A stretch of DNA of 64,000 bases, taken from positions 1 to 64,000 of the IMG/VR virus record IMGVR_UViG_3300042367_000228; one strand, given 5' to 3'. The notes below the pieces were generated by a model. The model saw nothing but the letters and a program-made list of their open reading frames with translations, did not search any database and was not told where the DNA came from. This document shows positions 3,204-23,841 of this stretch, one piece after another. The translations under genes and the position numbers were made by a program. Positions within the stretch are counted from its first letter, which is position 1. Each line of letters begins with the position of its first letter.

Positions 3204-4613
3204 CTAAAATTCGTCTACATCTAAATTGTTTATCAGGTCTCTAAGTGCAGTACTTTGTATGCTACCATTAACCTTTGCTACAGGTTTTCCGTCTGGATCT
3301 TGTGTAGTGCCGCGTGCCTTAATTGAGTTTAACAGTGCATTGCCTGCTGTGGGTGTAGATGTATTACCGTAGCCTTGATCTTCATCGATGTCTGTAATAC
3401 GCAATGTATCAATATCATATCCTAAATCGATCTTCATGCCAACGCCAGAACTGCTACGTGTTTTCATAAGCTGGATTTGATATCTACCACGCTCGCGCAT
3501 AGCTCTACTTGTAAAGATACCAAATACGTTATCTGCAGTTTGGATCTTACTTAACCCACCTGATATATGACTATGATCAAATTCTACTTCTTCTACTGCA
3601 CCCCTATTAAGCTGTGCCGCAGTAACAAACACACAATTCTTTTCTACTGCTAAGTTTCTTAATTCTTCTGATACATATTTGTCTTTAATGAATAAGTCTG
3701 CTGGGCTAATCTTTTTACTCATTGGCATTAACAAATCCAAGTAATCTACTAGTAATACGTCAACTTTTCTATCTGTTTTAATTTCATATTCTTTTAAATA
3801 ACTTCTAATATCGTTAGCAGTTTTACCTGATGGCATATATTTTACTTGTAATGATCCTGATTTCTTAGCAGTCATTTTAACTTTAAGTTCTACATCATCG
3901 ATATTTTTAAATACTTCTCTAGTCGAAACGCCTGTTATCATACTATCAATACGCATAGATACAAGTTCTTCACTAAGTTCTAGTGTTAAATAAACTACGT
4001 TAAATCCTGCTAGTGCCCAGTTAACACCTAAGTTAGCTAGGAATAAACTCTTACCTGCGCCTGACCCACCTGCAAAAATATTAAGCTCTCCCCTGTTCAT
4101 ACCACCGAACAGTTTGTCATCCATGTTCTTCCAACCTGTAGATACTTGGCCGTTCTTGTCTTTAATCTTCATTAATCGTTCACGCGGATTAGCAAAGTAG
4201 TCTGTACCTAAATCTTTTTGTAAGCCAATTTGTACTGCTTGTTTAATTTTATCTTCTACTGGACCGTATTCGCCTTTTTCAAGTAAGTCGGCTGATTCAT
4301 TAATAGCACGTTCTAATCCTTTGTGTCTAATAAATGTTTCAAAGTCGTTAAGCAGCCAATCATAATGTTCTTCTTTGAGTCCGTCTACTTCTTTAAAGTC
4401 GCTCTGCGTAGCAGCGTTAATTATATCGAAAGTTGGCATTACGTTGTGTTCGTCAACGTAACTGTTTATAAAGTCTGCTGATTTTTGTAATTTACGATCG
4501 AATAATCTGTAATCAAATATGGATTGGCATCTAACAAATGTAGCTGCATCGCTTATCATCATTTCTAAATATAACTTCTGTATATCATAACCATAGTCTA
4601 CGTTTTGTGCCAT
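3204..4613 (-). CDS. gp41: Replicative DnaB-type DNA helicase (T4 gp41-like)
   Basis: Walker A GGSGAGKS, LTLELSEE, VDYLDL, TAAQLNR, QLMKTRS motifs; adjacent to primase. Confidence 0.92.
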   Translation of the reverse strand: MAQNVDYGYDIQKLYLEMMISDAATFVRCQSIFDYRLFDRKLQKSADFINSYVDEHNVMPTFDIINAATQSDFKEVDGLKEEHYDWLLNDFETFIRHKGLERAINESADLLEKGEYGPVEDKIKQAVQIGLQKDLGTDYFANPRERLMKIKDKNGQVSTGWKNMDDKLFGGMNRGELNIFAGGSGAGKSLFLANLGVNWALAGFNVVYLTLELSEELVSMRIDSMITGVSTREVFKNIDDVELKVKMTAKKSGSLQVKYMPSGKTANDIRSYLKEYEIKTDRKVDVLLVDYLDLLMPMSKKISPADLFIKDKYVSEELRNLAVEKNCVFVTAAQLNRGAVEEVEFDHSHISGGLSKIQTADNVFGIFTSRAMRERGRYQIQLMKTRSSSGVGMKIDLGYDIDTLRITDIDEDQGYGNTSTPTAGNALLNSIKARGTTQDPDGKPVAKVNGSIQSTALRDLINNLDVDEF

Positions 4614-5590
4614 TCGATGTCCTTAAAATATTGTTTTGCTCTTAGTTGGATCTTAAGTGAATAAGATTGTTTTGCATCAATAATTAGCCAGAGCGTAGCC
4701 AATCTACCTAATTTAATAACAGCATCGTTAACATCTTTAATGCCATCGGGCCAGTCTGGCATGCTAACAGACCAGCCATATTCTATTGCTTGTTCTACAG
4801 TTTTAGGACCTTCGTGGTCTCTATCTGGTACTAGTATAATTTCTTTGTTTAATCTTTTCAAGAGCCAATCTTGTTTTTCTTTTATTTGTGAACCTAGAAT
4901 AGCGCAACCGTCTATGCTAATAGCATCAAATGGACCTTCGCATACGATGACAAATGCTCGATCATGTGTTTGCCTATCTAAGTTGAATACATAGTCAGGT
5001 TGTTGCTCAGAGAAGTAGCGTAGTTTCTTTTCTTGTGTTACCAGTCTTGCAGTATATCCTACGATGCGTTTTTCATAAAAGAATGGAATAATAAGTCTAT
5101 CGTTAAATCCAGTTTTAGGAGTCCAATAAAACGGATAGTCTTCTAAGTATAAATGTCTTTTATCGATGTATTCTAAAACTGGAATTAGTTTTTCTGGTAT
5201 TTTGTCTAAAAATGAAGTAATAGGGTGTGCATCAATTGGCATAGTTCTTAATTCAAATTTAGGCATTAGTGTTTTCATTACATACGTTTCAGATGCTTCT
5301 AAACGGAATGCTTCTAATGTAAGTTTACTAATTTCACTATCGCTCATGTTCAAGTAGATCATAAGTGATTTCATATTTTTACTAATGTGCCGACCTGGTT
5401 GCCAACTAGCCTTAAAGCTACAATTGAAGCAGTGAAACGTAACTGCATCGCCATCGTTAATAATAAATCCGCCACGTTGGCGGGTATCCTGGCAACAAGG
5501 TGCGTTGCCAGTTATCCATCCGCTTAAAGTTGTTTTAGTTCGCCTACCAGTAGTCCAGTACATTCGCAATGTATCTGTAATAAGGTTCAT
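4598..5590 (-). CDS. gp61: DNA primase (T4 gp61-like)
   Basis: N-terminal Zn-binding CC...HCFNC; TOPRIM motifs VCEGPFDA, VPDRD, KDVND. Confidence 0.88.
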   Translation of the reverse strand: MNLITDTLRMYWTTGRRTKTTLSGWITGNAPCCQDTRQRGGFIINDGDAVTFHCFNCSFKASWQPGRHISKNMKSLMIYLNMSDSEISKLTLEAFRLEASETYVMKTLMPKFELRTMPIDAHPITSFLDKIPEKLIPVLEYIDKRHLYLEDYPFYWTPKTGFNDRLIIPFFYEKRIVGYTARLVTQEKKLRYFSEQQPDYVFNLDRQTHDRAFVIVCEGPFDAISIDGCAILGSQIKEKQDWLLKRLNKEIILVPDRDHEGPKTVEQAIEYGWSVSMPDWPDGIKDVNDAVIKLGRLATLWLIIDAKQSYSLKIQLRAKQYFKDIEWHKT

Positions 5591-5644: not shown

Positions 5645-6419
5645 CAGTTCCGGTAGGGTTGATGGGGTGATTTCCTTGATATAACACACGGAAATATTTA
5701 AAGTCGCCTACAGGTAATGTATAGCGTAGTATAGTATCTTCAGGTGTCACTGGAATATCAATTTTAGTTGCATGTAAGTATGAATTAACACTAATGGTAG
5801 AGTTAGTGGTGCCTTCTAACCAAATGTTCCCAACAAAGCCAGTGACCTTAATTTCAATCCAAATTTGATCAGTAGCAACTGCTTCGTAAAATGTAGTCGG
5901 TATAGAGCTAGTGTGGTATATAACCTTGCCCATGTAATCGATCTCACCGGTAAATGTTTTGTAGACTTTATCATCACGGAATGTAGGCATTGCATCGCCT
6001 ATCAACTCTATAGTACCAACTGCACCAAATCTTGAGTCGGCATATAACATAATATCTTTACCGTCTTTAACTGCGCTAACGCTATATTTTAAAAACTGCG
6101 GAGATAGATCTACTAAGTCATCTTCTGGAATAGTTACATACGCTATACCTTTTTTTCCAGTAATCGGAGTAATCACATACGGGCTATTTGGTAGTGCATT
6201 ACCCAATGCATCCATAATGTTTAACGAAATGCCGCTTAATGTAGTTAAGTCAATTCGTTTTTGGTCTGCATTTTTAATGTCAAACTCGATAGTATTATCA
6301 ATACCATTATATATTTTTACGTTTCTTTGATACACGTTTGTGAACTCCACTGTAAACCCAGCCAGATCGGCAATAAGCTCGATACGATTTGGGTATAAAT
6401 AACTTGATATTTTTTGCAT
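5622..6419 (-). CDS. Hypothetical protein, possibly structural (BppU-like N-terminal beta-rich region)
   Basis: Long ORF; ATG 6419 preferred, downstream of ATAAATA at 6439-6445; beta-rich composition. Confidence 0.6.
   Translation of the reverse strand: MQKISSYLYPNRIELIADLAGFTVEFTNVYQRNVKIYNGIDNTIEFDIKNADQKRIDLTTLSGISLNIMDALGNALPNSPYVITPITGKKGIAYVTIPEDDLVDLSPQFLKYSVSAVKDGKDIMLYADSRFGAVGTIELIGDAMPTFRDDKVYKTFTGEIDYMGKVIYHTSSIPTTFYEAVATDQIWIEIKVTGFVGNIWLEGTTNSTISVNSYLHATKIDIPVTPEDTILRYTLPVGDFKYFRVLYQGNHPINPTGTVDKVTVS
6394..6401 (+). promoter_or_regulatory. T4-type late promoter TATAAATA for the plus-strand ORF at 6444
   Basis: Exact TATAAATA 42 nt upstream of the ATG. Confidence 0.55.
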
Positions 6420-6443
6420 TGGCAATATCCTTTATATATATTT

Positions 6444-6821
6444 ATGGCAAACTTAAGAGATAACATAGAACAAAATCTACCATTTATTAGTGTTTTAAAC
6501 TACGGAAATGAAGAATACGTTGGAATAGTAATTAATCAAGACCAATATGTGACTAGTTTTTACGATTTAAATGCAATACAGTCTGCTGAAGACAAAGCTT
6601 CTTTCTTAGAAATAGGAGAAATATGGTGGTGGGAGTCAAATCGTCAATTTCCGATATCTATTTTTTGTAGAGAAGAAATTCGACCGTTTGCATACGCAAT
6701 CAAAACATTTAATAGTAAAGACACACGTATTATATTAGGTCCGGTTGTTAACTTGATGAATTTAACAATTAAACGAGTTAAACGAAAATCTGTTCAACTC
6801 GTTCGAAGACCACCCCGTTAG
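6444..6821 (+). CDS. Hypothetical protein
   Basis: ORF; ATG 6444 (MANLRD) preferred over 6414, which overlaps the divergent gene. Confidence 0.7.
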   Translation: MANLRDNIEQNLPFISVLNYGNEEYVGIVINQDQYVTSFYDLNAIQSAEDKASFLEIGEIWWWESNRQFPISIFCREEIRPFAYAIKTFNSKDTRIILGPVVNLMNLTIKRVKRKSVQLVRRPPR

Positions 6822-7384
6822 TTTTGTTCACAAATTAAATTCATTTGTACCACAATTGCCATAGCATACGCAATGGCATGTGATTTACGGAATGCGTATC
6901 CTGCATCAGTGTCTGTGTGGTCCCATATTTCGTTCATCACCGTAGTCCATTCTTTCCCAATCAAATAGCGTTTCGCCGGTCTTATCATCGCTAGGACTGC
7001 AGCTAATTGTTCCACCGAAGTCGGCTGCATCTGTTTCAGAATATCGGTATGCCCGTTTATATGAAATAGTAGATTTACAAAATCTTCTTGAAGAAGTAGT
7101 TCCCATATTGGTTCAGTTCCCATTAAATGTAATAAATGATTATTGTCTCTAATGTCTTTGTATATGTTGACATTTAGAAAATCAATTTTAAAATATCCCC
7201 TTTGCTCGGCTTCTTTATAGTCAATTGTACTTACACCTGTTATAGGATTGTGTGGTATGTTTTGACAATAGATGCCGGTGTTATGTCTCTTAAAAGTGTT
7301 TTCGTTACTAATGGCTGCCGTAACATGTTTCATCTTTGTTAGCGCGTGTGATCTATCAAAGAAATCTATATCTATGTCAGGCAT
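6818..7384 (-). CDS. dnaE: Miniature DnaE/PolC-like (C-family DNA polymerase) catalytic core
   Basis: PDIDIDF, KRHNTGIY, YFKIDFLNV, MIRPA and YAFRKSHAIAYA are colinear with DnaE PDFDVDF, KHAGGVV, KFDFLGL, LFRPG and YGFNKSHSAAYA; GGAGG SD upstream. Confidence 0.85.
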   Translation of the reverse strand: MPDIDIDFFDRSHALTKMKHVTAAISNENTFKRHNTGIYCQNIPHNPITGVSTIDYKEAEQRGYFKIDFLNVNIYKDIRDNNHLLHLMGTEPIWELLLQEDFVNLLFHINGHTDILKQMQPTSVEQLAAVLAMIRPAKRYLIGKEWTTVMNEIWDHTDTDAGYAFRKSHAIAYAMAIVVQMNLICEQN

Positions 7385-7438
7385 GTGTGAAGAACCTCCA
7401 ATTATAAAGCGGTTTTATTACAACCGCAATATTTATGT

Positions 7439-8131
7439 TCATATGTTGCTCTCCTTGACCACTGTTTTTACAAGGGCTACATCATCCGATAATTTCTTAA
7501 ACTTGCTAATCCAAAACGGAACATCTAATGCCAAACTCACTACAGCTAGTTGCTCGTCATTAAATTTTTGTATAAGTTGTTTACCAGAATTACAGTTTAA
7601 TACTAGCCATGGACTAATTTTTCCATCCTTAATATCATACATTGCTCTATTTAAACTTACATATAAAAAATATTGATTCCACAATGCATTGTTTGCATCA
7701 CCCCAATCTAACATATGGGTAATACTGCGTTCTAATGCGGTATCTGCAGATTCGGTTTTAATTAAATCTACAACATACTTGTCATATAAATCATCTCTAC
7801 ACCAATGATCTAATTTAACACCGCTTGTTACTACATACGATATAAACTTATCAGGGTATAGTGGTTTTACGTTACTAACAAAACTTCCAAACTTAACAAA
7901 TGCATTGTAATATGGACTTTTACAAAAATCTTCATATGTTTTCATGCCATGGAAGTTTTGTGTCTTTTGATAAAATGTATTGTATGTTTCAAAGCCTAAT
8001 ACTACATGTTTATCTCGTTGGGCCAAGGCTCTGCGTTTTGGCTCACAAACGTGTACTGCAAGAGTAGATTCTTTTACGTATTTGCTCTTGCAGTATTGGC
8101 ATTGAAATGGCTTAGAAGGAGTTAAATTCAT
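7439..8131 (-). CDS. Zinc-finger protein; possibly gp59 helicase-loader-like
   Basis: C-x2-C-x3-Y-x5-L-x2-H-x-C at N-terminus; replication-gene context; the gp59 similarity is weak. Confidence 0.55.
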   Translation of the reverse strand: MNLTPSKPFQCQYCKSKYVKESTLAVHVCEPKRRALAQRDKHVVLGFETYNTFYQKTQNFHGMKTYEDFCKSPYYNAFVKFGSFVSNVKPLYPDKFISYVVTSGVKLDHWCRDDLYDKYVVDLIKTESADTALERSITHMLDWGDANNALWNQYFLYVSLNRAMYDIKDGKISPWLVLNCNSGKQLIQKFNDEQLAVVSLALDVPFWISKFKKLSDDVALVKTVVKESNI

Positions 8132-8610
8132 TTTTTGAATTTCTTTTTAATTTCTTTATCGTCTAAACCGTGGTCTTTAGCAAGCTCGGTTATTTCTTTA
8201 TCAGTAGTTAACGATGCAAGCATCTCAACTTCTTTCATTTTCATACTAGGATACATTTCGGCTAAAAATACTACTTTTTTATTATCGGTATTATCTTTTT
8301 TCTTAAATCCAATCCATTGATGGAAAAACGTTTTCTCGCCGTTATATGAACACATACACAATAGCATCCACATTAATTTAGGATGTTGTTGTAGGTCAAA
8401 CCAATGCTTGTTAAAGCATTCGTTTACTGAATAAACAAAATGTTCTTGAATATCTCTAGGTTGACCTTTTACATTACTAATATATCTATTTAGAATAAAC
8501 AATTCACTCTTTAATAGCTTTTGATTAGTTTCGTCAAGTTCATCCCACAGTTCTCGTATACCCAAATCAACTGCTTGTATTTTTTCTTTTAGTTCTAATT
8601 TTTCAGTCAT
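8128..8610 (-). CDS. Probable clamp-loader small subunit (gp62-like)
   Basis: FILNRYIS...N...HPKL...FHQWIGFKKK pattern resembles T4-like gp62; ATG 8610 preferred. Confidence 0.55.
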   Translation of the reverse strand: MTEKLELKEKIQAVDLGIRELWDELDETNQKLLKSELFILNRYISNVKGQPRDIQEHFVYSVNECFNKHWFDLQQHPKLMWMLLCMCSYNGEKTFFHQWIGFKKKDNTDNKKVVFLAEMYPSMKMKEVEMLASLTTDKEITELAKDHGLDDKEIKKKFKK

Positions 8611-9116
8611 TATAGTAATTTGTCTAAATGTATTAATTCGCTTTGGCGTGATACTTCTTTTACAAAATATGCACAATCGGGTTTTGATTTTTGTTGTAAC
8701 GGTGTTGCTAGTAAATGACCTAATTTCATTTTAGGAAAATACCATTTAACATCGTTGTAAAAATTTACAATTTCGATCTTCTTGAATTCAATCCTAAAGT
8801 CTGATATTGGGTTAAACACTAGTGCATCAAACCCTCTATCATTTAAACTAGTTAACGGGAGTATTTCGATATGTGTTGCACTGCTACCATCTCCTACTGC
8901 AATACACCAATCGATTGGCATAGTTACTTCGTTATTACCAATTTTTAATACCATTGCTGGCGAATTAAATGATTCTAAATAGATTAATGGTGCAAAGAAG
9001 AAATCCGGATCTTGAGGATTACTGTTATCTAATACACCAAATCGCATGCTATCATCAACTTCGTCAGGCAAGCTGTTAAGTGAATACCACTCATTGTTAA
9101 CTGTTAATATATTCAT
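8610..9116 (-). CDS. Hypothetical protein, possibly a degenerate Hint-fold domain
   Basis: ATG 9116 overlaps the uvsW stop (ATGA); beta-strand pattern recalls Hint but lacks Cys1 and terminal HN. Confidence 0.6.
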   Translation of the reverse strand: MNILTVNNEWYSLNSLPDEVDDSMRFGVLDNSNPQDPDFFFAPLIYLESFNSPAMVLKIGNNEVTMPIDWCIAVGDGSSATHIEILPLTSLNDRGFDALVFNPISDFRIEFKKIEIVNFYNDVKWYFPKMKLGHLLATPLQQKSKPDCAYFVKEVSRQSELIHLDKLL

Positions 9117-11695
9117 TTCCAATCTACCTTATTAATTTCAAATGCATATTTTGCATCTTTATAAAATTTCTTTCTTTCTGCAAGATGTCTTTTAGCATAT
9201 TTGCAAGTACTAGTAATATCATAAATTTGCACAAAGTCTTTATCGTGTGCCTTTCTAATTCCTCTACCAATACTTTGTATAACTCTTGTAAAACTTTTAC
9301 CGGGTTCGATTAATACTAAATTAAAAATACGCGGAATATTAATGCCAACAGCAGCAACGCCATATGTTGCTACAATAATTTTATTTGATGCTGTTTTTAC
9401 TTCGTCGTATTCTGTTTTTCTATCTTTTGTTTTTACATTACCTGATACAAATACTGCATCTTCTATTTCATTTATAATAAAATTACCTGTTTCTATTCTA
9501 CCAACTAACACTAATGTATTTCCAGTTTCTGCAATAGTTCTAATAGTATCACTAATAAAACGCATTCTATCTTCATTTGTAACCTGATATTTTAATTCAT
9601 CTGCATATGACCGAAATGCTGGTAAATCAATTAGCTGCAGTACCTTTACATGACACGCAGACAATACACCTGCATCTTGTAATTCATGTGCTTTAATACC
9701 GCCTACTACAGGACCAATGCTTGCAAAGATTTGTTCATATTCAAACTTTTCTTTAGGCACCGTACCTGTTAATCCCCACCGAATTGGAGCATTACATAAG
9801 TTATGTGTAAGTAAGTTTTTTAATACATCGGCTTTTGCCATATGGACTTCGTCAACAATTACTGCGCAAACGCCGTCTAAAAATTCTGCTAATGTTATAA
9901 TGTCGTGTTCTTGATTTTTACTTTTCTTATCTAGTATGTTTAAACTTTGCCATGTACAAATTGTGTGTGTTTTGTCTAAATCCTTTTTATCACCGTAATA
10001 CATACCTACATCAAGATTCACGTTAACGAAGTCTTCACATGTTTGTTCTACTAAACTCTTATTTGGAACAATAACAATAGTACGACCGAATGGTTCACAT
10101 ACGTGAGCAAGCGTTGCTGTTGTTATCGTGTTATGAGTTACAATATAATCATCAGTAATATATAAATGATCCGGACTATCAATTAAAATACATTTAACTG
10201 GTTCAGTAGATACTAAGTTAATATCTGTAATATTAAGTTTTAAAGTATTTCCATATTGATATTTAAAGTTAGTAGCATTTTGTTTCCTAGATAATGATGT
10301 AAGCATCCACGGTTTAGGAAACTTAGTAGACACGGTATAAGAATCTTTACACGGGGTTCTTATTCCATTATACATATATGTATTATTAGTTTTTGTAAAA
10401 AGTTTTGCAATTCCACCGACACTTCTAACTAATCTTTGAAATCCGACCGCTAACTCATAACTAACCGATGTAAACTTAACACTAGATTTGTCAATTGTTC
10501 CATCACTATCAACTAATCCTCGTATAAGTTCTAATCGTTGTTCTAAACTACCTTTAAAATATATTTCAGGTATGAATTTAGAATGGCTGTATGTCTCCAT
10601 TAAGTTAAGGTCTGTTAAAATTTGAATATATTTATGAAATGAACTTTTAGAATCAGTAATATATCCTTTTTCATTTCTAATTTTATTTTTCATATGTAAC
10701 GATTTTTTATTTTGTAAAATTTTATCAGTTTTAAATGAAATTCCATAATCATACCGTGTTACATGCGTAACTTTATAGTTTTCGTCTAACTTTGATGAAA
10801 CTTTGTTAATTAGTTCATCATCAGCTGAACTAAATCCAACATGGTTATTTCTAAAACTACCGTCACCTAATAAAAACCCTAACAGCCATGGATCTAATGG
10901 TAAATTAATATCAGTATTATCATATTCCATAGTAGCCAATGGGATTCCAACTGATCTCTTAGTAGATTTTTTTAGTTTAATTAACTCACGTGTTGAAATA
11001 TTCCGTATTGAACCTGTTGACGATCTGCCCCACCCAATATTATATATTGGCCATATGTGGTCTTCACATGATCTTGCAGATCGTCCATCATAGAATGATA
11101 GTTCATACACATCCTTAATTCCTGGTTCATAAATTTCTAATATTGGCACTGATTTTCCGGTTGGAGTTATTACATAATCCCCAACTTGCATTTCGCCCAT
11201 TGTCTTCCACCCATCCGGTGTTAAAACTTTACTAGAGTAAGGTTGGCATTTACCGGCACCTGTGGCAATTTCTTGTAATGCTTGAGTTTGTGTTAAAAAT
11301 TTATTAATAGCTTCAACTTGATAGTCACGTAACATAATAGGCTGTCCGGCTTGAGAATGCCCTTCAGGCCATACTTTGCCTTGATCTGCCCAATATGATT
11401 CTGTAACTGGTGTAAAGTTTAATTTATAATGCTTTCTTAAATCTTCTATTTCGTCTATTTCAATACCGCTTTTATTAAGTACAGATAATATTGCTTCTAA
11501 ATTATTTAAATATCCAGTCCCGCCTAATCCAAATAGGCTAACAGTGCCGTCCCATCTACCTAACTTAAAAGAAGGTTGATATCTAGCATACGGCACTTCG
11601 AACTTAAATGTGTTTGCTAATTTCTTACGCACATCTAATGGCAAATTTTCAAACTTAATATTAACTTCGTCTTTTATGACTAATTTAACTCCCAT
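9113..11695 (-). CDS. uvsW: UvsW-like SF2 DNA helicase containing an intein
   Basis: LRDYQ Q-motif, ATGAGK/T Walker A split by the intein, VDEVH, GLTGT, QSIGRGIR; lies beside uvsY and uvsX. Confidence 0.92.
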   Translation of the reverse strand: MGVKLVIKDEVNIKFENLPLDVRKKLANTFKFEVPYARYQPSFKLGRWDGTVSLFGLGGTGYLNNLEAILSVLNKSGIEIDEIEDLRKHYKLNFTPVTESYWADQGKVWPEGHSQAGQPIMLRDYQVEAINKFLTQTQALQEIATGAGKCQPYSSKVLTPDGWKTMGEMQVGDYVITPTGKSVPILEIYEPGIKDVYELSFYDGRSARSCEDHIWPIYNIGWGRSSTGSIRNISTRELIKLKKSTKRSVGIPLATMEYDNTDINLPLDPWLLGFLLGDGSFRNNHVGFSSADDELINKVSSKLDENYKVTHVTRYDYGISFKTDKILQNKKSLHMKNKIRNEKGYITDSKSSFHKYIQILTDLNLMETYSHSKFIPEIYFKGSLEQRLELIRGLVDSDGTIDKSSVKFTSVSYELAVGFQRLVRSVGGIAKLFTKTNNTYMYNGIRTPCKDSYTVSTKFPKPWMLTSLSRKQNATNFKYQYGNTLKLNITDINLVSTEPVKCILIDSPDHLYITDDYIVTHNTITTATLAHVCEPFGRTIVIVPNKSLVEQTCEDFVNVNLDVGMYYGDKKDLDKTHTICTWQSLNILDKKSKNQEHDIITLAEFLDGVCAVIVDEVHMAKADVLKNLLTHNLCNAPIRWGLTGTVPKEKFEYEQIFASIGPVVGGIKAHELQDAGVLSACHVKVLQLIDLPAFRSYADELKYQVTNEDRMRFISDTIRTIAETGNTLVLVGRIETGNFIINEIEDAVFVSGNVKTKDRKTEYDEVKTASNKIIVATYGVAAVGINIPRIFNLVLIEPGKSFTRVIQSIGRGIRKAHDKDFVQIYDITSTCKYAKRHLAERKKFYKDAKYAFEINKVDWK
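10130..11248 (-). mobile_element. Intein (373 aa) with LAGLIDADG homing endonuclease
   Basis: Starts CQPYSSKVLTPDG after GAGK, ends YIVTHN before +1 Thr; LLGFLLGDGS and LIRGLVDSDG motifs. Confidence 0.95.
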
Positions 11696-12946: not shown

Positions 12947-13402
12947 TTAAAGAGTTGCGTCTTCCATGCCTGCACATCTTAGTCGTATAATATTGCTTAA
13001 TGCATACGATTTCTGATCTAAGGCTTTTGTAATACCCAACCATTGATTTCTCAGTAGTGCAAATTCGTTAATAACAAGTTCATATTCGATTACATCGTCT
13101 TCACCTTCTACATACTTTTCACAATCGCGACTACTTAATGCCCTTGCGTATGTTTCTAAATATTTTCTAAAGTGATAACTCTTTAATCTTTTAAGTTCTA
13201 TATTAAGGAACTCAAGGATAGCTTCGACTTCTTGAAGCTGTCCATATCTATGTTCTACAATGCCTGGCATTGCTGCAGATGCTTTTTCTACATTTCCTAT
13301 TATTTTACACTCTTGTTTGGCACTTGTCAACTCTGTTTGAAAATATACAATGCCGTCAGGTAGTTTTGTAATGTCTTTTACGATTGTAGAATACCAACTC
13401 AT
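12947..13402 (-). CDS. uvsY: Recombination mediator UvsY
   Basis: YLETYARALSSRDCEKYVEGE motif; between uvsX and uvsW. Confidence 0.88.
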   Translation of the reverse strand: MSWYSTIVKDITKLPDGIVYFQTELTSAKQECKIIGNVEKASAAMPGIVEHRYGQLQEVEAILEFLNIELKRLKSYHFRKYLETYARALSSRDCEKYVEGEDDVIEYELVINEFALLRNQWLGITKALDQKSYALSNIIRLRCAGMEDATL

Positions 13403-13638
13403 TAAAACTCCAATTCTGAATAATCGTCATCATCTTCGTCGCTATTATCTTCTAAGTAGTATGTAATAGCTTGATCTAATACAGGATCAATACCAATAGC
13501 ACCTTGAAAGGTACGATCAGTAGCACCAAAGTCTGCTAACAATTCAATAAATCTCTCAGCAGCAATTTCTGCTTGTTTCTTATCAATATAATCTGCAAAC
13601 AACAACCATACATCAGCAATTTGTGTTTCATTCAACAT
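13402..13638 (-). CDS. Small acidic hypothetical protein
   Basis: ATG 13638 (MLNETQ) overlapping the uvsX end; acidic tail. Confidence 0.65.
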   Translation of the reverse strand: MLNETQIADVWLLFADYIDKKQAEIAAERFIELLADFGATDRTFQGAIGIDPVLDQAITYYLEDNSDEDDDDYSELEF

Positions 13639-14716
13639 TATTATCGTCCTCCATGACGTAATCATCTTCAATGATATCTTCAATGTCATCAAATACCACT
13701 GGTACATCAGTAAACTCGTTCATTGCTCTTAACAACGAATCATTAGTATTACTTTCCCATTCCTTACGGTACAATTTAATTTCAGTACCATCAGTTGCCA
13801 CATATTTAAGTCTATTTCCATCTTTTTTCAAGATATTCTTTTTCTCAAATAAATCAACTAAACCACTAAATGGGTTCATACCTGTAGTATATGGAATTTT
13901 AATTTGTAATGACTCAAATGGTTTAGCATAACGTGTTTTCATAATTTTACATGAGGCACGAATACCGTTAACTTCGCTAACTTTATTACCATCTTCGTCT
14001 TCTTTCAATTTAAGTTTTTTCATTGCTACTACAATACTAGATGCATAGATAAAACCTTGACCGCCTGAAATCTTATCGTCTGGATCAAACATATCTTGTG
14101 ATGCATAACTATGGTTAGTACATACTAAACCTACATTGTGACTACCGAACATATTAACACAGTTACGAACGAGTGCTGTAAGTGCTTTAGGTTTACGACC
14201 CATATCACCTTTTAAATCACCTGCTTCGAATTGATTAATATCAGTCGGAGTTAATAACATACCTAATGAATCTACTACAAACAAGACTTTCGGTTTGTCT
14301 TCCATAGCTTTGTATTCTTTCATAAACTCACTTATAGTTTTAGCTACGTCATCAATCATAGCCATGTTAAGTTTAAGAAGTTTTTCTTCACTTGTATCTA
14401 CACCTAGTGCGTGTAGCCAAGCTTCGTCTAGTGCGTTTTCAGAATCAATCAATACTACATAAATTTCTTGTTCTTGAGCGTGTTTAATGATATTACCTGA
14501 GCAGATGTAACTTTTACCTGCACCTGATTCGCCTGCAAACACAGTTACTTTGCCTAATGGAATACCTTTGTTGAAATCTGAACTAATAAGATAGTTCAAT
14601 GCGAAATTGCCAGTACTTACCCAATCTGTAGGATCATTAAAGCCTACACCTAAGCCGTCAATGCTTTTTGTTAGAGTTTTTCGAAATTTTGTTAAATCAA
14701 AGGGACGAGTAGCCAT
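13628..14716 (-). CDS. uvsX: RecA-like recombinase UvsX
   Basis: [10 protein letters not shown] Walker A, IDSENA, VVDSLG, KTRYAKP; own GGAG SD. Confidence 0.95.
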
Positions 14717-15461
14717 TAGTTATCTCCGTGTGTAGTTTTCTATTTTCTTTTTTGTTATGTTTGCCAAACCGATCTTTACGTTCTTCTGCTGTCATTTTAG
14801 ATATTTGTTCTTTCTTTATATTACTCATTTTTTTACATATTTCTGCATTATGAGTATACTCTAATTTTGCTTGAGATTCTCTCATTTTTCGTTTAGTTTC
14901 ATCAGTATGCTTCATACCAATATGTCCATTAGATTTACCTTTTTTTGCTAAAGAAATTGCCAATTTTCTCTCTTCAGACATAGGACCTCTAAGTTTTCCA
15001 CTCAATGATGCTTTTATTTTTTGACGCTGTTCGTTAGTAAATCCTCGGCGTTTAGCAGATGCACTCATTTTCTTAATAGTTTCCACTGAATGACGCTTAT
15101 TGAGCATTCCGGTGATACCTTGTTTAATATTCTCTCTCATTTTTTTTCGAGTTAATGGTCCTGGATTTATTAATCCATCGCCTCCATCTGTTAAATTGTG
15201 TAATATACCGGTACCTATATCTTTTCTACCATAAAAAGATATTAAATCTATTTCTAATGAAATTGCTGCTGACTCAAATAAATTTTCTTTTATGAATTTA
15301 ATTTTTGATTTATCTTTTGGAACGCTGATTCTACCATGCGTCTCAAAAGCTCGATTTTTTTTACCTTTACCGATATAATACGGTGTATTATCAGATTTTC
15401 TTAAATAACTGTAAACATAAAAAATAGGGGTATGATTATTATCAAAGGGTTTTGTTGCCAT
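14697..15461 (-). mobile_element. Free-standing GIY-YIG homing endonuclease with NUMOD3-like repeats
   Basis: FYVYSYLR...PYYIGKG; [10 protein letters not shown]; repeated [19 protein letters not shown]; starts MATKPFD. Confidence 0.9.
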
Positions 15462-15480
15462 GAATATACTCCAAACAATG

Positions 15481-15508
15481 TAACGTAGCAAGACCCCTTG
15501 CTACGTTA
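15481..15508 (-). terminator. 12-bp stem-loop between ssb and the endonuclease
   Basis: TAACGTAGCAAG-ACCC-CTTGCTACGTTA. Confidence 0.6.
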
Positions 15509-15520
15509 ATCTTACACCTA

Positions 15521-16531
15521 TTAACCGCGGTTACGAATTCTTGCTAAAATATCATTAGCACGAGAATCGCTTGATGCCGCAGGCGCTGTGTCAACAGCAG
15601 TTGGTGGAGTATATGCATTAACAGTTTCAGCTGGCTCATCCCAAGGTAATTCTTCTTCGACTTTGTGTACTACAGGAGCTACGGGTGCAACAACTGGTGC
15701 TACTGTAGCAGTATGCGTAGGAGCTGCATTTTCGTCAAACTGTACACCATATGGTCTAAAGTATTTGCCCCAACGTTCGATGTCATATGCTTCACCATTT
15801 ACTGATGCTTCAAACATTTCCATCATAACTTTAAGTTCAACGTCGTTTGGTTTTTTAGGTAAGTAGTCTGATAAGTTTGGTAATCCAAATTTATCAATTG
15901 CTGCATTTTCAGCATCGCTTAATGGACGTGTGTTACGTTTCCAAGTTGATGTTGAATAATCAGCAAAGCCGCCTTTGCTACCGACACGTAATGTAAAGTC
16001 GAAACCATTTACATAGTCTGTAGGTAATTCTGTATATTCTTCGTCAGTTAATGCTGCGTGAATTAATTTGTTAATTTGTGGTCCGATAATAAATCTACGG
16101 ATTGAATTTTCAGGTGGTTCTTTTTCGTCTAAACCGTCTTTAGATACAAAGCCATGATAAATGAAGCTACGTTTTTTCCAGTATTTACGACCCATGTCTT
16201 CTAATGAAGGATCTTTAAACCAGGGACGCACTTCTGAAAGAATCGGACATACTGAACCGTCGTTATACATTTCAACGCATGGTACATTTACTGTTACTGC
16301 TTTATTATCTGTTTGACCTTTAATACCTGCAAAAGGTAATTTGATTACGTTGCGTTCAACCCAGAAAAAAGTGTTATCTGGATTACCGTCTGGTAGGAAT
16401 CTAAAAGTTGCTTCGCCGCCTGATTTAATAGTCCAGAAAGGATAAATTGATTTATCGCCGCCTGTGTTACTATCTGTTGTACGTGTTTCTGCCGCTTTTA
16501 ATTTTGCTCTGATTTCTGCTAGTGTTGCCAT
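15521..16531 (-). CDS. gp32: Single-stranded DNA-binding protein (T4 gp32-like)
   Basis: FRFLPD, PCVEM...CPI, GRKYWKKRS motifs; acidic flexible C-terminal region. Confidence 0.9.
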   Translation of the reverse strand: MATLAEIRAKLKAAETRTTDSNTGGDKSIYPFWTIKSGGEATFRFLPDGNPDNTFFWVERNVIKLPFAGIKGQTDNKAVTVNVPCVEMYNDGSVCPILSEVRPWFKDPSLEDMGRKYWKKRSFIYHGFVSKDGLDEKEPPENSIRRFIIGPQINKLIHAALTDEEYTELPTDYVNGFDFTLRVGSKGGFADYSTSTWKRNTRPLSDAENAAIDKFGLPNLSDYLPKKPNDVELKVMMEMFEASVNGEAYDIERWGKYFRPYGVQFDENAAPTHTATVAPVVAPVAPVVHKVEEELPWDEPAETVNAYTPPTAVDTAPAASSDSRANDILARIRNRG

Positions 16532-20973: not shown

Positions 20974-22083
20974 TCACATATTAGAGGAAACAAATATTGG
21001 TAGAGGTGCTTCCCAGTCCTCAATTCTTTCTTCAATTCGCATTCTTTCAAATACCATAGGATCCCATTCTGCTAGTATATCAATCATTCTTACTACTAGT
21101 AATAGTGCTGCTACTAAGTCATCATGTTGCCCCGGTTTACCTTTAAAACTAATACCATGCGCAATAAAAGATTTCAATTCAGTAATTAATGGTTTACTGT
21201 TGATAGTCATTTTATCTTCTTCTACAAAATATTTTAATTTTGAACACGCTGCTATTTTATTATTAAAGGTAGTATTAAATCCTTTGCGGAATTTACGAAC
21301 ATGCCCTTTTCTGCCAGGTTCACTCACAAACAACCCTGGAAATGATTCTTCTCCTAAATTTTCAACTACTACTAACGCGCTTTCGCCTACGGTATTGTTT
21401 TCTATTGACCAATATATAGAATTATATTGATCATATCCTAATTCATCTTGAATGTATAATAGAATTTCTCTAAGTAACTTTACTTGTCCTTGAATAGGTG
21501 TAATGTTATGATGCCATTCTGCTACTTGATTCATCGATGGTAATTCAAAAACTGTTATTGCTGAAAAGTCACCACCAGTTCCTAAACTAGGATCTAATGC
21601 AATCAAGTATAAATTACCAGCTGTTGGAGCCTTATACCAACGTACTTGACCCATTTTCATTATAGGTTCTTTACCGTATAATTCTACTAACTTTAAACTG
21701 CTAATAAGAGTTTCGTCGTATACTAAAAATTCGCAATTTTTGATTAGAACGTTATTTGCATAATACCTGTGATTCTGTTCAACATTAAACAGATCGTATA
21801 CTGGTTCTTCATCTAACAGCCACTTAACAGACACGACATTATCAAGTTTGCCATTAACTAAAATTTTTTGTTTAGGCAATAATAATCTACCTTCTATCGG
21901 TTTAAACCCATTAAGAAAATATTTATGATCAGGAGTGCTTTTAAGTGAATGACGTTGTGTAGTTACATGAAGTATCTTTTTAACACCTTTAACTAAGATT
22001 CCGTCAAACTTGCTCCAGCCGGTGTCAGTTAGCACCGTTAATCCTAACTTATTTTTTATTAATTCTTCCGCGTGTAAATCCAT
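20974..22083 (-). CDS. terL: Terminase large subunit, C-terminal nuclease half, preceded by split-intein C fragment
   Basis: After ...VLIKN comes CEFLVYDETLI; RNase H-like LIALDPSLGTGGDFS and HDDLVAA; start at ATG 22083 or TTG 22086. Confidence 0.9.
   Translation of the reverse strand: MDLHAEELIKNKLGLTVLTDTGWSKFDGILVKGVKKILHVTTQRHSLKSTPDHKYFLNGFKPIEGRLLLPKQKILVNGKLDNVVSVKWLLDEEPVYDLFNVEQNHRYYANNVLIKNCEFLVYDETLISSLKLVELYGKEPIMKMGQVRWYKAPTAGNLYLIALDPSLGTGGDFSAITVFELPSMNQVAEWHHNITPIQGQVKLLREILLYIQDELGYDQYNSIYWSIENNTVGESALVVVENLGEESFPGLFVSEPGRKGHVRKFRKGFNTTFNNKIAACSKLKYFVEEDKMTINSKPLITELKSFIAHGISFKGKPGQHDDLVAALLLVVRMIDILAEWDPMVFERMRIEERIEDWEAPLPIFVSSNM
21736..22083 (-). mobile_element. Split intein, C fragment (~116 aa)
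   Basis: TPDH (block B), PVYDLFNVEQNHRYYANNVLIKN (blocks F/G), +1 Cys. Confidence 0.88.
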
Positions 22084-22828
22084 CAAGTTCTGTTCCTTCT
22101 TTAAATTGTTTGTTAATTACTCCATTATTATACCAACACATGCCTCTCTTTGATATTTGTAATCTAGGAAGTCTTCCCTTAACAAATCCGTCAGGGCATA
22201 TATCTTTATAGGTCTCAATAACTCCATTATTAAACCATTGTTTGTCTTTTGCTGATCCAGGTTTTCCTTTTTTGGAGTCACTTATTTTTTTTGCTCTTAT
22301 AGGACATTTGTTAAACTCATAATAACCTGGTTGGCTTCTAACTAACAGTTGAGTTTCTCTTTCAGATTCAGACCATTTAGTACCTAATGTACGTCCACCA
22401 ATTCCTGGACGAGCGATACCTTTATTATATGGAATAGTTCCTTTTCTCTGAATACTCATTAATTGTTTGGTTTCTTCAGTATGTTTAAATCCAGTACACC
22501 CATCTCCGCCTAGTGTTTTATTTGTTAACGGGCCGGCATGATCAATTAATCGGCCGTACTGGTTAATCAGATCAATTTCAAGAGCCTTTGCTGCAGCATC
22601 TGTTAACTCAGTTTGATACATTTCTATAACCGGAGTTAGATTTTGCGCGACTAATCTAGAAATTACCGCAACTTTTAAATGATTACACGTAGTTTCTGCA
22701 GTTTCTGATAAATGATCTTTATATCGCCTACCGTGGCCCTTCCCAATATAAAACGGTTGATTTGCTAAAATACTCATATAACTTACTGTGATGTTAATTG
22801 GGGTTTTATAAATATATACATAATACAT
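22049..22828 (-). mobile_element. Free-standing GIY-YIG homing endonuclease between the terL halves
   Basis: YYVYIY...PFYIGKG, NKTLGGDG, HTEETKQLMS, two W(F/Y)NNG..GF.(K/R)GR repeats; ATAAATA at 22834-22840. Confidence 0.9.
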
Positions 22829-22854
22829 GCTAGTATTTATCATTTCGTCATATA

Positions 22855-23781
22855 CTATGAACTTAATAATCGCATAATATCGCCCATTGTTAGTTTTTCA
22901 ATTTTTCCAGATGGCCATTTAACAGTTACAACTGAATCATGCACAATACAACCGTATTCACGTCTAAACTTTTCTTCACCTATACGACCGAGCTCTTCTT
23001 GTTTCCATTCTTCATCTCGATCTGGATGATCCCACCAGTCAGACCGGAACCCAGAAAATCCATTAATTCCGATCTTGTTTGGTTTTTCATTCCCAAACTC
23101 ATCAAAAAACTGTTGGCTTTCCTTCCATATAGTAGCAAATTGATCTTCGTCACTGTTTGGTGTAGAAGTAATAATACAACGTCCACCAGTTGCTAGTGTA
23201 GGTGATATAGAAGTCCAAAACTCTTCAGCAATGTTAGGTTGTAGGAAAGCAAACTCATCGCAATATAATAACGAAATACTCATACCCCGTCCTGTTGTGC
23301 CAGTAGTAGTTTGACTTACAATACGTGATCCATTATCAAATTCCATAGACCCTTTATTGTAACTTACTACACCTGCACGTAAGAAGTCTGGACATAGTTC
23401 GTATCCATAACGTATACGTTGCATAATCTCTTGAGCACCTGTGTACTTGTGCGCTGCGATTAAAATAGTTTGATCCGGGTGAAACATTGCATACCATAAT
23501 AAGTATGCAGATGCACATGTTGTTTTACCACTTTGACGCGGTAACATATTAATATTAAAACGATGAGCATGATAACAATTTAATAAGTTAACTTGATAAT
23601 CAAATGGTTGAAATAATAATTTACCTTTTACTGAATGTTGGATATGAAAGAAGTTTCTTGAAAAATGTAAAAATCCGTCAGCCGGATCCGAACACATTAA
23701 TATATCATTAATCTGTTGTTCGTCAAATTTTTCAGTCTTGTGTGCTTTTTTTGTAAGGACACCGTCTAGCGATTTACCCAT
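22855..23781 (-). CDS. terL: Terminase large subunit, N-terminal ATPase half, ending in split-intein N fragment
   Basis: PRQSGKTT Walker A, YCDEFAF Walker B, STPN; ends FRREYG-CIVHDSVVTVK...; ATG 23781 follows GTAAATA (23807-23813). Confidence 0.92.
   Translation of the reverse strand: MGKSLDGVLTKKAHKTEKFDEQQINDILMCSDPADGFLHFSRNFFHIQHSVKGKLLFQPFDYQVNLLNCYHAHRFNINMLPRQSGKTTCASAYLLWYAMFHPDQTILIAAHKYTGAQEIMQRIRYGYELCPDFLRAGVVSYNKGSMEFDNGSRIVSQTTTGTTGRGMSISLLYCDEFAFLQPNIAEEFWTSISPTLATGGRCIITSTPNSDEDQFATIWKESQQFFDEFGNEKPNKIGINGFSGFRSDWWDHPDRDEEWKQEELGRIGEEKFRREYGCIVHDSVVTVKWPSGKIEKLTMGDIMRLLSS
22858..22950 (-). mobile_element. Split intein, N fragment (31 aa)
   Basis: CIVHDSVVTVKWPSGKIEKLTMGDIMRLLSS: block A-like, Cys1 at the conserved EY(E/G)|CEF terminase site. 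Confidence 0.82.
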
Positions 23782-23813
23782 ATATAATCCTTTTTTTTGT
23801 ATTATGTATTTAC

Positions 23814-23841
23814 AAAAAAAAGCGGACATAATGTCCGCTTT
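23814..23841 (-). terminator. Intrinsic terminator
   Basis: AAAGCGGACAT-T-ATGTCCGCTTT followed by a T-tract on the minus strand. Confidence 0.8.

What the first reader, a model, noticed from the sequence alone, without database searches (positions are those of the whole stretch)
6818..7384. 188-aa miniature C-family DNA polymerase inside a T4-type replisome
This is not a simple DnaE fragment. All five core motifs are present in order, including the three catalytic Asp (PDIDIDF and KIDFL). The thumb-side segment and most of the fingers between them are each cut to about 25 aa, from roughly 100 in E. coli DnaE. PHP, HhH, OB and clamp-binding domains are absent. The ORF is intact with a GGAGG SD and sits among helicase, primase, gp62-like and SSB genes. 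T4-like phages normally use family-B gp43, which is not in this window. Inference: a minimal or multi-subunit replicase, or a repurposed nucleotidyltransferase.
Basis: partly seen in the sequence, partly recalled or inferred. Interest (0 to 1): 0.8.

Follow-up and report, generated by a model that had tools for sequence, protein, structure and literature searches.

The report
Half of a split mini Pol III
This 188-residue gene is a real, strongly conserved piece of a bacterial-type (family C) DNA polymerase in an uncultured jumbo phage. It is the catalytic half of a two-gene "minimal Pol III" already described in 2021 for this phage group, not a complete miniature polymerase, and its relatives also carry the usual T4-type polymerase.

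Summary
Window 6818-7384 (-) is an intact 188-aa ORF with a GGAGG Shine-Dalgarno. Its blocks (MPDIDIDF, KIDFL, IRP, YAFRKSH) match DnaE in order by sequence and by fold.

The ORF covers E. coli DnaE residues 401-779, with the thumb and about half of the fingers deleted. It lacks the first half of the palm, including the GxGRGS nucleotide-binding loop.

In all isolate relatives examined, that half is a separate ~170-aa gene 33-183 kb away. It is not in this window. The two halves are predicted to bind (ipSAE 0.91, best control 0.47). They also occur fused in one natural 375-aa protein, whose model matches Pol III alpha/PolC palm plus fingers at Z 19.8.

The catalytic residues D3, D5, K66 and D68 are invariant in 88 diverse homologues. 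dN/dS is about 0.1.

Iyer et al. 2021 (PMC7824862) already described this "minimal, split Pol III alpha" in group 2.2 (Rak2/PBECO4/Atu_ph07-like) jumbo phages, next to a family-B polymerase. PolB is present in every listed isolate relative.

So this is a known kind whose biochemistry is untested. It is most likely a heterodimeric accessory DNA polymerase, not the replicase.

The parts
6818..7384 (-). ORF of 188 aa (P0001). It is the C-terminal (Mg2+/template-binding) subunit of the split minimal Pol III alpha, made of the second half of the palm plus a trimmed fingers domain.
   Evidence: It is 100% identical to IMGVR_UViG_3300044655_000757.
7395..7399 (-). Shine-Dalgarno GGAGG, 10 nt upstream of the ATG at 7382-7384.
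   Evidence: Read directly from the sequence.
7361..7381 (-). Codons for P2-F8 (PDIDIDF). This is the DxDxD strand carrying the two metal-binding Asp, aligned to E. coli D401/D403 and M. tuberculosis 413-425.
   Evidence: alignment. D3 and D5 are invariant and D7 is >=90% conserved in 88 homologues. DxDxD lies within 20 residues of the N-terminus in 78 of the 80 family members printed; the other two begin at other points of the protein.
7175..7189 (-). Codons for K66-L70 (KIDFL), holding the third catalytic Asp (E. coli D555) and the conserved Lys (K553).
   Evidence: K66 and D68 are invariant.
6971..6988 (-). Codons for M133-K138 (MIRPAK). This is the fingers 'RP' motif (E. coli ...FRPG, about residue 640).
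   Evidence: P136 is invariant; R135 and K138 are >=90% conserved. A weak PF17657 finger-domain hit covers residues 110-137.
6860..6898 (-). Codons for Y163-M175 (YAFRKSHAIAYAM). This is the fingers 'KSH' motif (E. coli YGFNKSHSAAYA, 754-765).
   Evidence: H169 and A174 are >=90% conserved. PHROG 405 (full-length DnaE-like) positions 774-809 align here.

Best explanation
The ORF encodes the C-terminal subunit of a two-gene, 'minimal' family-C (Pol III alpha/DnaE-like) nucleotidyltransferase. This enzyme is typical of group 2.2 (Rak2/PBECO4/PA5oct/Atu_ph07-like) jumbo phages.

What this subunit supplies (shown): the palm strands with the three metal-binding Asp (D5, D7, D68) and K66, plus a cut-down fingers domain carrying the RP and KSH motifs.

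What the partner supplies (shown in relatives): a separate ~170-aa protein, encoded far away and outside this window, provides the first half of the palm with the GxGRGS loop that holds the incoming nucleotide's triphosphate.

Assembly (inferred): the two proteins associate non-covalently, without an intein, into a heterodimer of about 360 aa. This rebuilds the Pol-beta-like active site of Pol III alpha. It has no PHP, thumb, clamp-binding, HhH or OB domains.

Role (inferred): the heterodimer is an active, dNTP-using, poorly processive DNA polymerase that works beside the phage's T4-type family-B replicase. Plausible jobs are extending primase-made primers, or gap filling and repair. It is not the main replicase.
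For: Identity and fold:
- Collinear DnaE matches by sequence and by structure.
- PHROG 11778 match.

Missing half:
- The ORF begins at DxDxD, and so do 78 of the 80 family members printed.
- The GS motif is absent from the ORF and from the whole window by regex, tblastn and HMM (best E 0.34).

Partner gene:
- Atu_ph07 gp316 ends ...GVGRGSCVSS...FSEFLE, exactly where DnaE continues with MPDFDVDF.
- Its family profile aligns to E. coli DnaE 211-392.
- It hits PF07733 and PHROG 11127.
- GxGRGSxxxS is invariant.

Co-occurrence:
- Genus counts for the two halves are nearly identical across isolates.
- The genes lie 33-183 kb apart.

Natural fusion:
- P0264 (375 aa) is N-half plus C-half. hhalign gives 99.8% for residues 7-184, and residues 190-371 match P0001.
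- PF07733 spans the junction.
- Its model matches Taq Pol III alpha 285-830, E. coli 270-773 and PolC 817-1288 at Z 19-20, rmsd about 3.1 A over about 290 residues.

Predicted complex:
- ipSAE was 0.91 in three runs and the best control was 0.47. That mark was reached by 58 of 80 solved complexes and 2 of 110 mismatched pairs.
- The interface joins P0001 residues 2-9 to the GRGS loop, partner residues 130-143.

Selection:
- D3, D5, K66, D68 and P136 are invariant in 88 representatives sharing 31-81% identity.
- dN/dS is 0.08-0.15 at dS 0.46-0.88.
- There are at least 7,990 clusters of homologues, about 185-210 aa in the 120 listed.

Context:
- The C-half sits in the helicase-primase-UvsW-UvsX-SSB module.
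- The N-half sits 2-7 genes from the clamp loader in three distant phages.
- PolB is present in all listed relatives.

Prior description: Iyer et al. 2021.
Against: - No biochemical evidence exists for polymerase activity of either half or of the pair. None was found in the paper library.
- The window's own partner gene and PolB could not be seen. They lie outside the window, and no closer N-half was found in IMG/VR or in the metagenome contigs.
- The complex score may partly reflect the model's memory of intact DnaE structures.
- Without a thumb, clamp-binding or HhH elements, it is unclear how the enzyme holds primer-template DNA.
- The proposed accessory role is inferred only from gene context and analogy.
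Confidence: 0.85

Rival explanations
1. A self-sufficient 188-aa miniature family-C DNA polymerase or minimal replicase that replaces gp43.
For: The three catalytic Asp and the finger motifs are present and conserved. No PolB is in the window.
Against: - It lacks the N-terminal half of the palm and the GS triphosphate-binding loop, which is invariant in a separate, co-occurring gene family.
- The predicted interface is large, with 168 contacts.
- A fused natural form exists.
- PolB is present in all listed relatives.
Confidence: 0.04
2. The two-subunit enzyme is a Pol-beta-fold nucleotidyltransferase that no longer copies DNA. Examples would be template-independent tailing, synthesis of a nucleotide signal, or an anti-defence activity.
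For: Thumb, clamp-binding and duplex-binding domains are all missing. Phages often repurpose nucleotidyltransferases. There are no activity data.
Against: - The finger motifs that contact template and incoming dNTP in DnaE (RP, KSH) remain nearly invariant.
- Both genes sit in replication modules, next to helicase-primase and next to the clamp loader.
- The fused model superposes on the DNA-bound Pol III alpha and PolC ternary complexes at Z 19-20.
Confidence: 0.1
3. A decaying remnant of a once full-length phage or host dnaE gene, that is, a pseudogene fragment.
For: It covers only about a sixth of the length of DnaE. Pfam finds no significant domain in it.
Against: - dN/dS is about 0.1.
- Catalytic residues are invariant.
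- There are at least 7,990 homologue clusters and 413 50%-identity representatives, with the same start point (DxDxD within 20 residues of the N-terminus) in 78 of the 80 members printed and similar length in those listed.
- The model is very confident and compact.
- Synteny is conserved from alpha- to gammaproteobacterial phages.
Confidence: 0.01

Closest known systems
Split minimal DNA polymerase III alpha of group 2.2 jumbo phages (Iyer, Anantharaman, Krishnan, Burroughs, Aravind 2021, Viruses 13:63; PHROG 11778 = C-half, PHROG 11127 = N-half; e.g. Atu_ph07 gp074 + gp316)
   Same: - The same family: PHROG 11778 at E 8e-71, 56% identity to Atu_ph07 and 40-44% to PBECO4 and PA5oct homologues.
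- The same start at DxDxD.
- The same replication-module synteny.
- It is described there as the 'C-terminal Mg2+- and DNA-template-binding' piece, accompanying a family-B polymerase.
   Different: - This copy is from an uncultured phage with no DNA-level match to any isolate.
- Its partner gene and PolB are outside the window.
- Added here: the fused single-chain relative, the fold and complex predictions, the selection figures and the mapping onto DnaE residues.
Bacterial Pol III alpha (DnaE; E. coli 2HNH, Taq 2HPI/3E0D, M. tuberculosis 5LEW) and PolC (3F2B)
   Same: - Pol-beta-like palm with DxD + D, a Lys before the third Asp, and the RP and KSH finger motifs.
- P0001 superposes on E. coli 401-779.
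- N-half plus C-half (the fused homologue) superposes on E. coli 270-773 and Taq 285-830 at Z 14-20.
   Different: - About 360 aa in two chains, against 1160 aa in one.
- No functional PHP domain, no thumb (58 aa between DxD and K-x-D, against about 150), about 100 aa deleted inside the fingers, and nothing after about residue 780 (no clamp-binding, HhH, OB or tau-binding parts).
- Only the N-half reaches Pfam's curated threshold (PF07733).
Cyanobacterial split DnaE joined by a split intein (e.g. Npu/Ssp DnaE)
   Same: A family-C polymerase catalytic subunit encoded by two distant genes.
   Different: - The split point is different.
- There are no intein sequences. The N-half ends right after ...FL[KR], and the C-half starts 0-20 residues before DxDxD.
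- The halves must therefore associate non-covalently rather than be spliced.
Full-length DnaE-like polymerases of other phages (group 3.2 jumbo phages such as Bacillus phage G; PHROG 405)
   Same: Homologous catalytic core. The N-half hits PHROG 405 positions 366-429 and the C-half hits positions 774-809, in the same order.
   Different: Those are host-like, about 1,200-aa single-chain replicases with a PHP domain. This one is a minimal two-chain version that coexists with PolB.

Membership tests
Family-C DNA polymerase catalytic subunit (Pol III alpha / DnaE / PolC) | Pol-beta-like palm with three metal-binding carboxylates (DxD strand + third Asp) | tested here: met
   PDIDIDF and KIDFL align to DnaE catalytic motifs. 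D3, D5 and D68 are invariant and D7 is >=90% conserved. Structural superposition supports this.
Family-C DNA polymerase catalytic subunit (Pol III alpha / DnaE / PolC) | N-terminal half of the palm with the GS (GxGRGS) triphosphate-binding loop in the same polypeptide | tested here: not met
   The ORF starts at DxDxD. The motif is absent from the ORF and the whole window. Relatives supply it in trans from a separate gene.
Family-C DNA polymerase catalytic subunit (Pol III alpha / DnaE / PolC) | N-terminal PHP domain | tested here: not met
   The model aligns only to E. coli 401-779. There is no Pfam PHP hit.
Family-C DNA polymerase catalytic subunit (Pol III alpha / DnaE / PolC) | Thumb domain between the DxD strand and the third Asp | tested here: not met
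   58 residues (a beta-hairpin, strands 21-27 and 30-39) stand in place of about 150 in E. coli.
Family-C DNA polymerase catalytic subunit (Pol III alpha / DnaE / PolC) | Fingers domain with the RP and KSH motifs | tested here: met
   The motifs are present and nearly invariant. The domain is shortened: E. coli 641-739 is reduced to about 10 residues, and the chain ends near E. coli 780.
Family-C DNA polymerase catalytic subunit (Pol III alpha / DnaE / PolC) | Clamp-binding, HhH, OB and tau-binding C-terminal domains | tested here: not met
   The protein ends at residue 188, equivalent to E. coli about 779.
Family-C DNA polymerase catalytic subunit (Pol III alpha / DnaE / PolC) | Template-directed DNA synthesis | not testable with these tools
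Split minimal Pol III alpha of group 2.2 jumbo phages, C-terminal subunit (Iyer et al. 2021; PHROG 11778) | ORF of about 190 aa matching the family profile and beginning at the DxDxD motif | tested here: met
   PHROG 11778 at E 8e-71 over residues 3-187. 96 isolate genomes carry it, all jumbo phages of this group. N-termini are shown.
Split minimal Pol III alpha of group 2.2 jumbo phages, C-terminal subunit (Iyer et al. 2021; PHROG 11778) | Separate N-terminal (NTP-binding) subunit gene elsewhere in the same genome | not testable with these tools
   It is absent from the 64-kb window, and the rest of the genome is not available. It is present in every isolate relative examined, and isolate-wide genus counts of the two halves are nearly identical.
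Split minimal Pol III alpha of group 2.2 jumbo phages, C-terminal subunit (Iyer et al. 2021; PHROG 11778) | T4-like (group 2) replication and recombination gene set around it | tested here: met
   DnaB-like helicase, Toprim primase, UvsW, UvsY, UvsX and gp32-like SSB lie within 10 kb. Synteny is shared with Atu_ph07, Phosso and L172.
Split minimal Pol III alpha of group 2.2 jumbo phages, C-terminal subunit (Iyer et al. 2021; PHROG 11778) | Co-resident family-B DNA polymerase | not testable with these tools
   It is not in the window. It is present in all listed isolate relatives and in Atu_ph07 as gp276/gp277.
Intein-split DnaE (cyanobacterial type) | N- and C-intein sequences flanking the split point | tested here: not met
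   N-halves end 0-10 residues after FL[KR]. C-halves begin 0-20 residues before DxDxD. There is no room for intein halves.

The most novel reading that the evidence does not exclude
The heterodimeric mini Pol III would be a required second polymerase of a hybrid replisome. In this reading a bacterial-type (family C) core extends primase-made primers or fills lagging-strand gaps, then hands over to the archaeo-eukaryote-type family-B replicase. It would then be the smallest working family-C polymerase known. As Iyer et al. suggest, it could also be a model of the ancestral Pol III core, before PHP, thumb and clamp-binding domains were added.
Probability: 0.25. Interest if true: 0.75.

Novelty: already known. 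Interest (0 to 1): 0.4.

Why it matters
If the two-chain, roughly 360-aa enzyme is an active polymerase, it defines the minimal catalytic core of family-C polymerases. It would also show a phage replisome that combines B- and C-family polymerases. That bears on how bacterial Pol III evolved, and on how labour is divided between two polymerases, as with DnaE and PolC in Bacillus.

The family is very abundant in metagenomes, with thousands of clusters, yet no activity has been measured. The biology is therefore open even though the gene family is already described.

For annotation, the practical lesson is that this ORF should be labelled 'Pol III alpha-like, C-terminal subunit of split enzyme'. 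It should not be labelled 'DNA polymerase' or 'replicase'.

Tried and rejected
1. Partner among the neighbours. None of these shows the GS motif or DnaE similarity, so they were rejected as the missing half:
   - the 230-aa ORF (a phage C2H2 zinc-finger protein family);
   - the 182-aa and 170-aa ORFs;
   - the 267-aa ORF ('virion structural');
   - the convergent 135-aa ORF;
   - the extra ORFs found at this spot in Atu_ph07 and Phosso.
2. N-half anywhere in the window. Regex, tblastn and a family HMM on all six frames found nothing.
3. N-half within 10 kb of the C-half in 80 IMG/VR loci. None was found, using the divergent Atu_ph07 query.
4. The window phage's own N-half. IMG/VR and metagenome contigs gave nothing closer than the partner of the 80%-identical relative.
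5. PolB on related uncultured contigs. A single-protein scan found only Atu_ph07 itself. Isolate genomes were used instead.
6. Supplementary tables of Iyer et al. These are not held.
7. First complex job. That protein was left out and not sent again.
8. First combined alignment for the fused protein. It put the N-halves in the wrong register. A smaller set with the correct register was used.
9. Split-intein idea. Rejected from the chain ends.
10. Immediate upstream ORF of the nearest unfused relative of the fused protein. It is not an N-half.

Full report
**What is in the sequence.** Window 6818-7384 on the - strand holds one intact ORF of 188 codons (P0001). It starts at the first start codon after the upstream in-frame stop. 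A GGAGG lies at 7395-7399, 10 nt before the ATG. The protein begins MPDIDIDF and contains KIDFL (66-70), MIRPAK (133-138) and YAFRKSHAIAYA (163-174).

**Similarity to DnaE is real.**
- phmmer against all PDB sequences returns only Pol III alpha chains. The best is M. tuberculosis DnaE1 at E 6.7e-7, in four collinear blocks (1-13 to 413-425, 54-138 to 567-664, 150-176 to 762-788).
- A profile of 88 homologues hits E. coli Pol III alpha at E 4.5e-6, covering 539-641 and 739-769.
- Pfam gives no significant hit, only a sub-threshold finger-domain match.
- PHROG 11778 'DNA polymerase' matches at E 8e-71.
- An AlphaFold2 model built on the 88-sequence alignment is very confident (pLDDT 95.3, pTM 0.88).
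- The first 14 Foldseek hits are all Pol III alpha chains and the 15th is a PolC-type family-C polymerase.
- VIA-align places all 188 residues on E. coli DnaE 401-779 (Z 9.2, rmsd 3.7 A), Taq 461-836 (Z 9.7), M. tuberculosis 419-807 and PolC 970-1299. The next unrelated hit has Z 2.4.

The ORF corresponds to a 379-residue span of DnaE compressed to 188 residues. The thumb is reduced to a beta-hairpin, with 58 residues between the DxD motif and K66 against about 150 in E. coli. About 100 residues inside the fingers are removed. Nothing follows E. coli position about 780.

**What kind of genome this is.** The neighbours are a T4-type replication and recombination module:
- DnaB-like helicase (3204-4613)
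- Toprim primase (4598-5590)
- UvsW (9113-11695)
- UvsY (12947-13402)
- UvsX (13628-14716)
- gp32-like SSB (15521-16531)

Beyond these lie terminase, tail tube, tail sheath and fibre genes. tblastn of P0001 against 50,697 phage records finds 96 genomes. All listed hits are Rak2/PBECO4/PA5oct/XacN1/Atu_ph07/Phosso-type jumbo phages of roughly 285-490 kb (apart from one 94-kb partial record), at 40-56% identity. Gene order around the ORF is shared with Atu_ph07, Phosso and an uncultured relative. There is no DNA-level match to any isolate. The ORF is 100% identical to one on IMG/VR contig 3300044655_000757.

**It is half of an enzyme.** In DnaE, the Pol-beta-like palm starts about 130 residues before the DxD strand. 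That stretch contains the GxGRGS loop that binds the incoming nucleotide's triphosphate. P0001 has none of it.

The Atu_ph07 genome paper lists a 'Pol III alpha subunit', gp316, which is a different gene from the P0001 homologue gp074. I fetched gp316. It is 177 aa and ends ...VVKGVGRGSCVSSYILYIIGVHKVNSIKYDLDFSEFLE. That is exactly the DnaE sequence that precedes MPDFDVDF.

Evidence on the gp316 family (the N-half):
- Members are 165-190 aa, carry Pfam PF07733 and match PHROG 11127.
- G135, G137, R138, G139, S140 and S144 are invariant.
- The family profile aligns to E. coli DnaE 211-392, ending at FERFL.
- It occurs in the same isolate genomes as the C-half. Genus counts match: Escherichia 34/34, Pseudomonas 11/11, Salmonella 8/8, Erwinia 8/8, Xanthomonas 4/4, Klebsiella 11/10.
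- It lies 33-183 kb away from the C-half.
- In Atu_ph07, Phosso and Paride it sits 2-7 genes from the clamp loader.

The window does not contain it. A regex for the motif, tblastn (best E 1.0) and a family HMM on all six frames (best E 0.34) all found nothing.

**Evidence that the two halves work together.**
1. A natural fused protein exists. An exhaustive HMMER search gave 413 representatives. One of them, P0264 (375 aa), matches P0001 over its residues 190-371. Its residues 7-184 match the N-half family at 99.8% hhalign probability. Pfam PF07733 runs straight across the junction, residues 97-207. Its AlphaFold2 model (pLDDT 83) superposes on Taq Pol III alpha 285-830, E. coli 270-773 and Geobacillus PolC 817-1288 at Z 19-20 and rmsd 3.1-3.5 A over about 290 residues. 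That is twice the Z of the C-half alone. The nearest C-half relative of P0264 is unfused, and the fusion is known from one 2.4-kb contig only.
2. A complex prediction supports binding.
   - ipSAE was 0.91 in three runs, against 0.47 for the best of three controls. That mark was reached by 58 of 80 solved complexes and 2 of 110 mismatched pairs.
   - There were 168 contacts. They join P0001 residues 2-9 (the DxDxD strand) to partner residues 130-143 (the GRGS loop).
   - This supports binding but does not prove it, and it may partly reflect the model's memory of intact DnaE.
3. There is no room for a split intein. N-halves stop right after FL[KR], and C-halves begin 0-20 residues before DxDxD. 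The association must therefore be non-covalent.

**Selection.** In 88 representatives sharing 31-81% identity with P0001, D3, D5, K66, D68 and P136 are invariant. D7, H34, G37, P44, W94, P121, A128, R135, K138, H169 and A174 are at least 90% conserved. Against the window ORF, dN/dS is 0.08-0.15 for relatives with unsaturated dS of 0.46-0.88. The word-indexed search returned at least 7,990 clusters, about 185-210 aa in the 120 listed. This rules out a decaying fragment and argues for a catalytically active protein.

**The family-B polymerase.** No ORF in the window resembles PolB. However, Atu_ph07 has PolB as gp276/gp277. tblastn with gp277 finds a full-length match in 94 records. These include every isolate listed for the C-half, among them PBECO4, 121Q, RaK2, PA5oct, Paride, XaC1, fHe-Yen9-04, Sharanji and Phosso. 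The mini Pol III therefore accompanies the T4-type replicase rather than replacing it.

**Prior knowledge.** Iyer et al. [quoted passage not shown] They suggest it may cooperate with PolB in synthesis of one strand or in repair. P0001 is the C-terminal piece of that enzyme. I found no later biochemical study.

**Mechanism, with its status.**
- Shown: homology and fold, the missing GS half, the partner family and its co-occurrence, the fusion, and purifying selection.
- Predicted: heterodimer formation with the GRGS loop packed against the DxDxD strand.
- Inferred from established DnaE knowledge (catalytic D401/D403/D555; GS loop and finger residues around the incoming dNTP): the pair forms a two-metal nucleotidyltransferase site that uses dNTPs on a template.
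- Inferred from context only: it is a distributive accessory polymerase in the replisome, doing primer extension or gap filling. It lacks a thumb, clamp-binding and duplex-binding parts, and its two genes sit beside primase-helicase and the clamp loader.

**Verdict.** The feature is real and correctly spotted. It is one subunit of an already described two-gene minimal Pol III alpha, not a complete 188-aa polymerase, and it is very unlikely to be the sole replicase. Novelty is low for the gene kind. Interest is moderate because the enzyme's activity and role are untested and the family is very abundant.

Noticed in passing
window 9113-11695 (-); insert about 10130-11248: The UvsW helicase gene carries a 373-aa intein with a LAGLIDADG endonuclease domain. 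It is inserted inside the Walker A motif (GAGK|T). An 80%-related phage has the same helicase without it (487 aa).
   Followed up: yes
window 20974-23829 (-): The large terminase is in two ORFs: 22855-23829 (ATPase part) and 20974-22086 (nuclease part). A homing-endonuclease-like ORF (22049-22843, PHROG 314) separates them. I did not examine whether this is an intron or a true split.
   Followed up: no
window 14697-15491 (-): A second homing-endonuclease-like ORF (PHROG 314/15526) sits between UvsX and the SSB gene.
   Followed up: no
window 6414-6821 (+): A convergent 135-aa ORF (PHROG 11637, unknown function) overlaps the 3' end of the polymerase ORF by 4 nt. An opposite-strand ORF of similar size (119-125 aa) sits in the same position in Atu_ph07 (gp073), Phosso and an uncultured relative; its homology to this ORF was not tested.
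   Followed up: partly
window 7439-8131 (-): The 230-aa protein directly upstream belongs to a phage-only family with an N-terminal C2H2-type zinc finger (PHROG 11058). It is syntenic with the polymerase half in distant relatives. A role as a DNA-binding accessory is possible but untested.
   Followed up: partly
window 56153-63998 (-): Four consecutive ORFs (376, 978, 482 and >=778 aa) are made of RCC1-type repeats (PHROG 7220/4219/16766), next to tail-fibre-like genes.
   Followed up: no
L165:1066-2193 (ENA metagenome scaffold, 2.4 kb): A natural single-chain version of the mini Pol III (P0264, 375 aa, N-half fused to C-half). It is a convenient construct for structure and activity work. It was seen on one contig only.
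   Followed up: yes
L003:26878-29847 (Atu_ph07 gp276/gp277): The family-B polymerase of Atu_ph07 is itself annotated as two adjacent ORFs (417 and 565 aa).
   Followed up: no
window 8128-8676 (-): The listed TTG start overlaps the upstream gene by 67 nt. The likely true start is the ATG 22 codons in (MTEKLELK...), which gives about 160 aa, as in the relative's 164-aa ORF.
   Followed up: no
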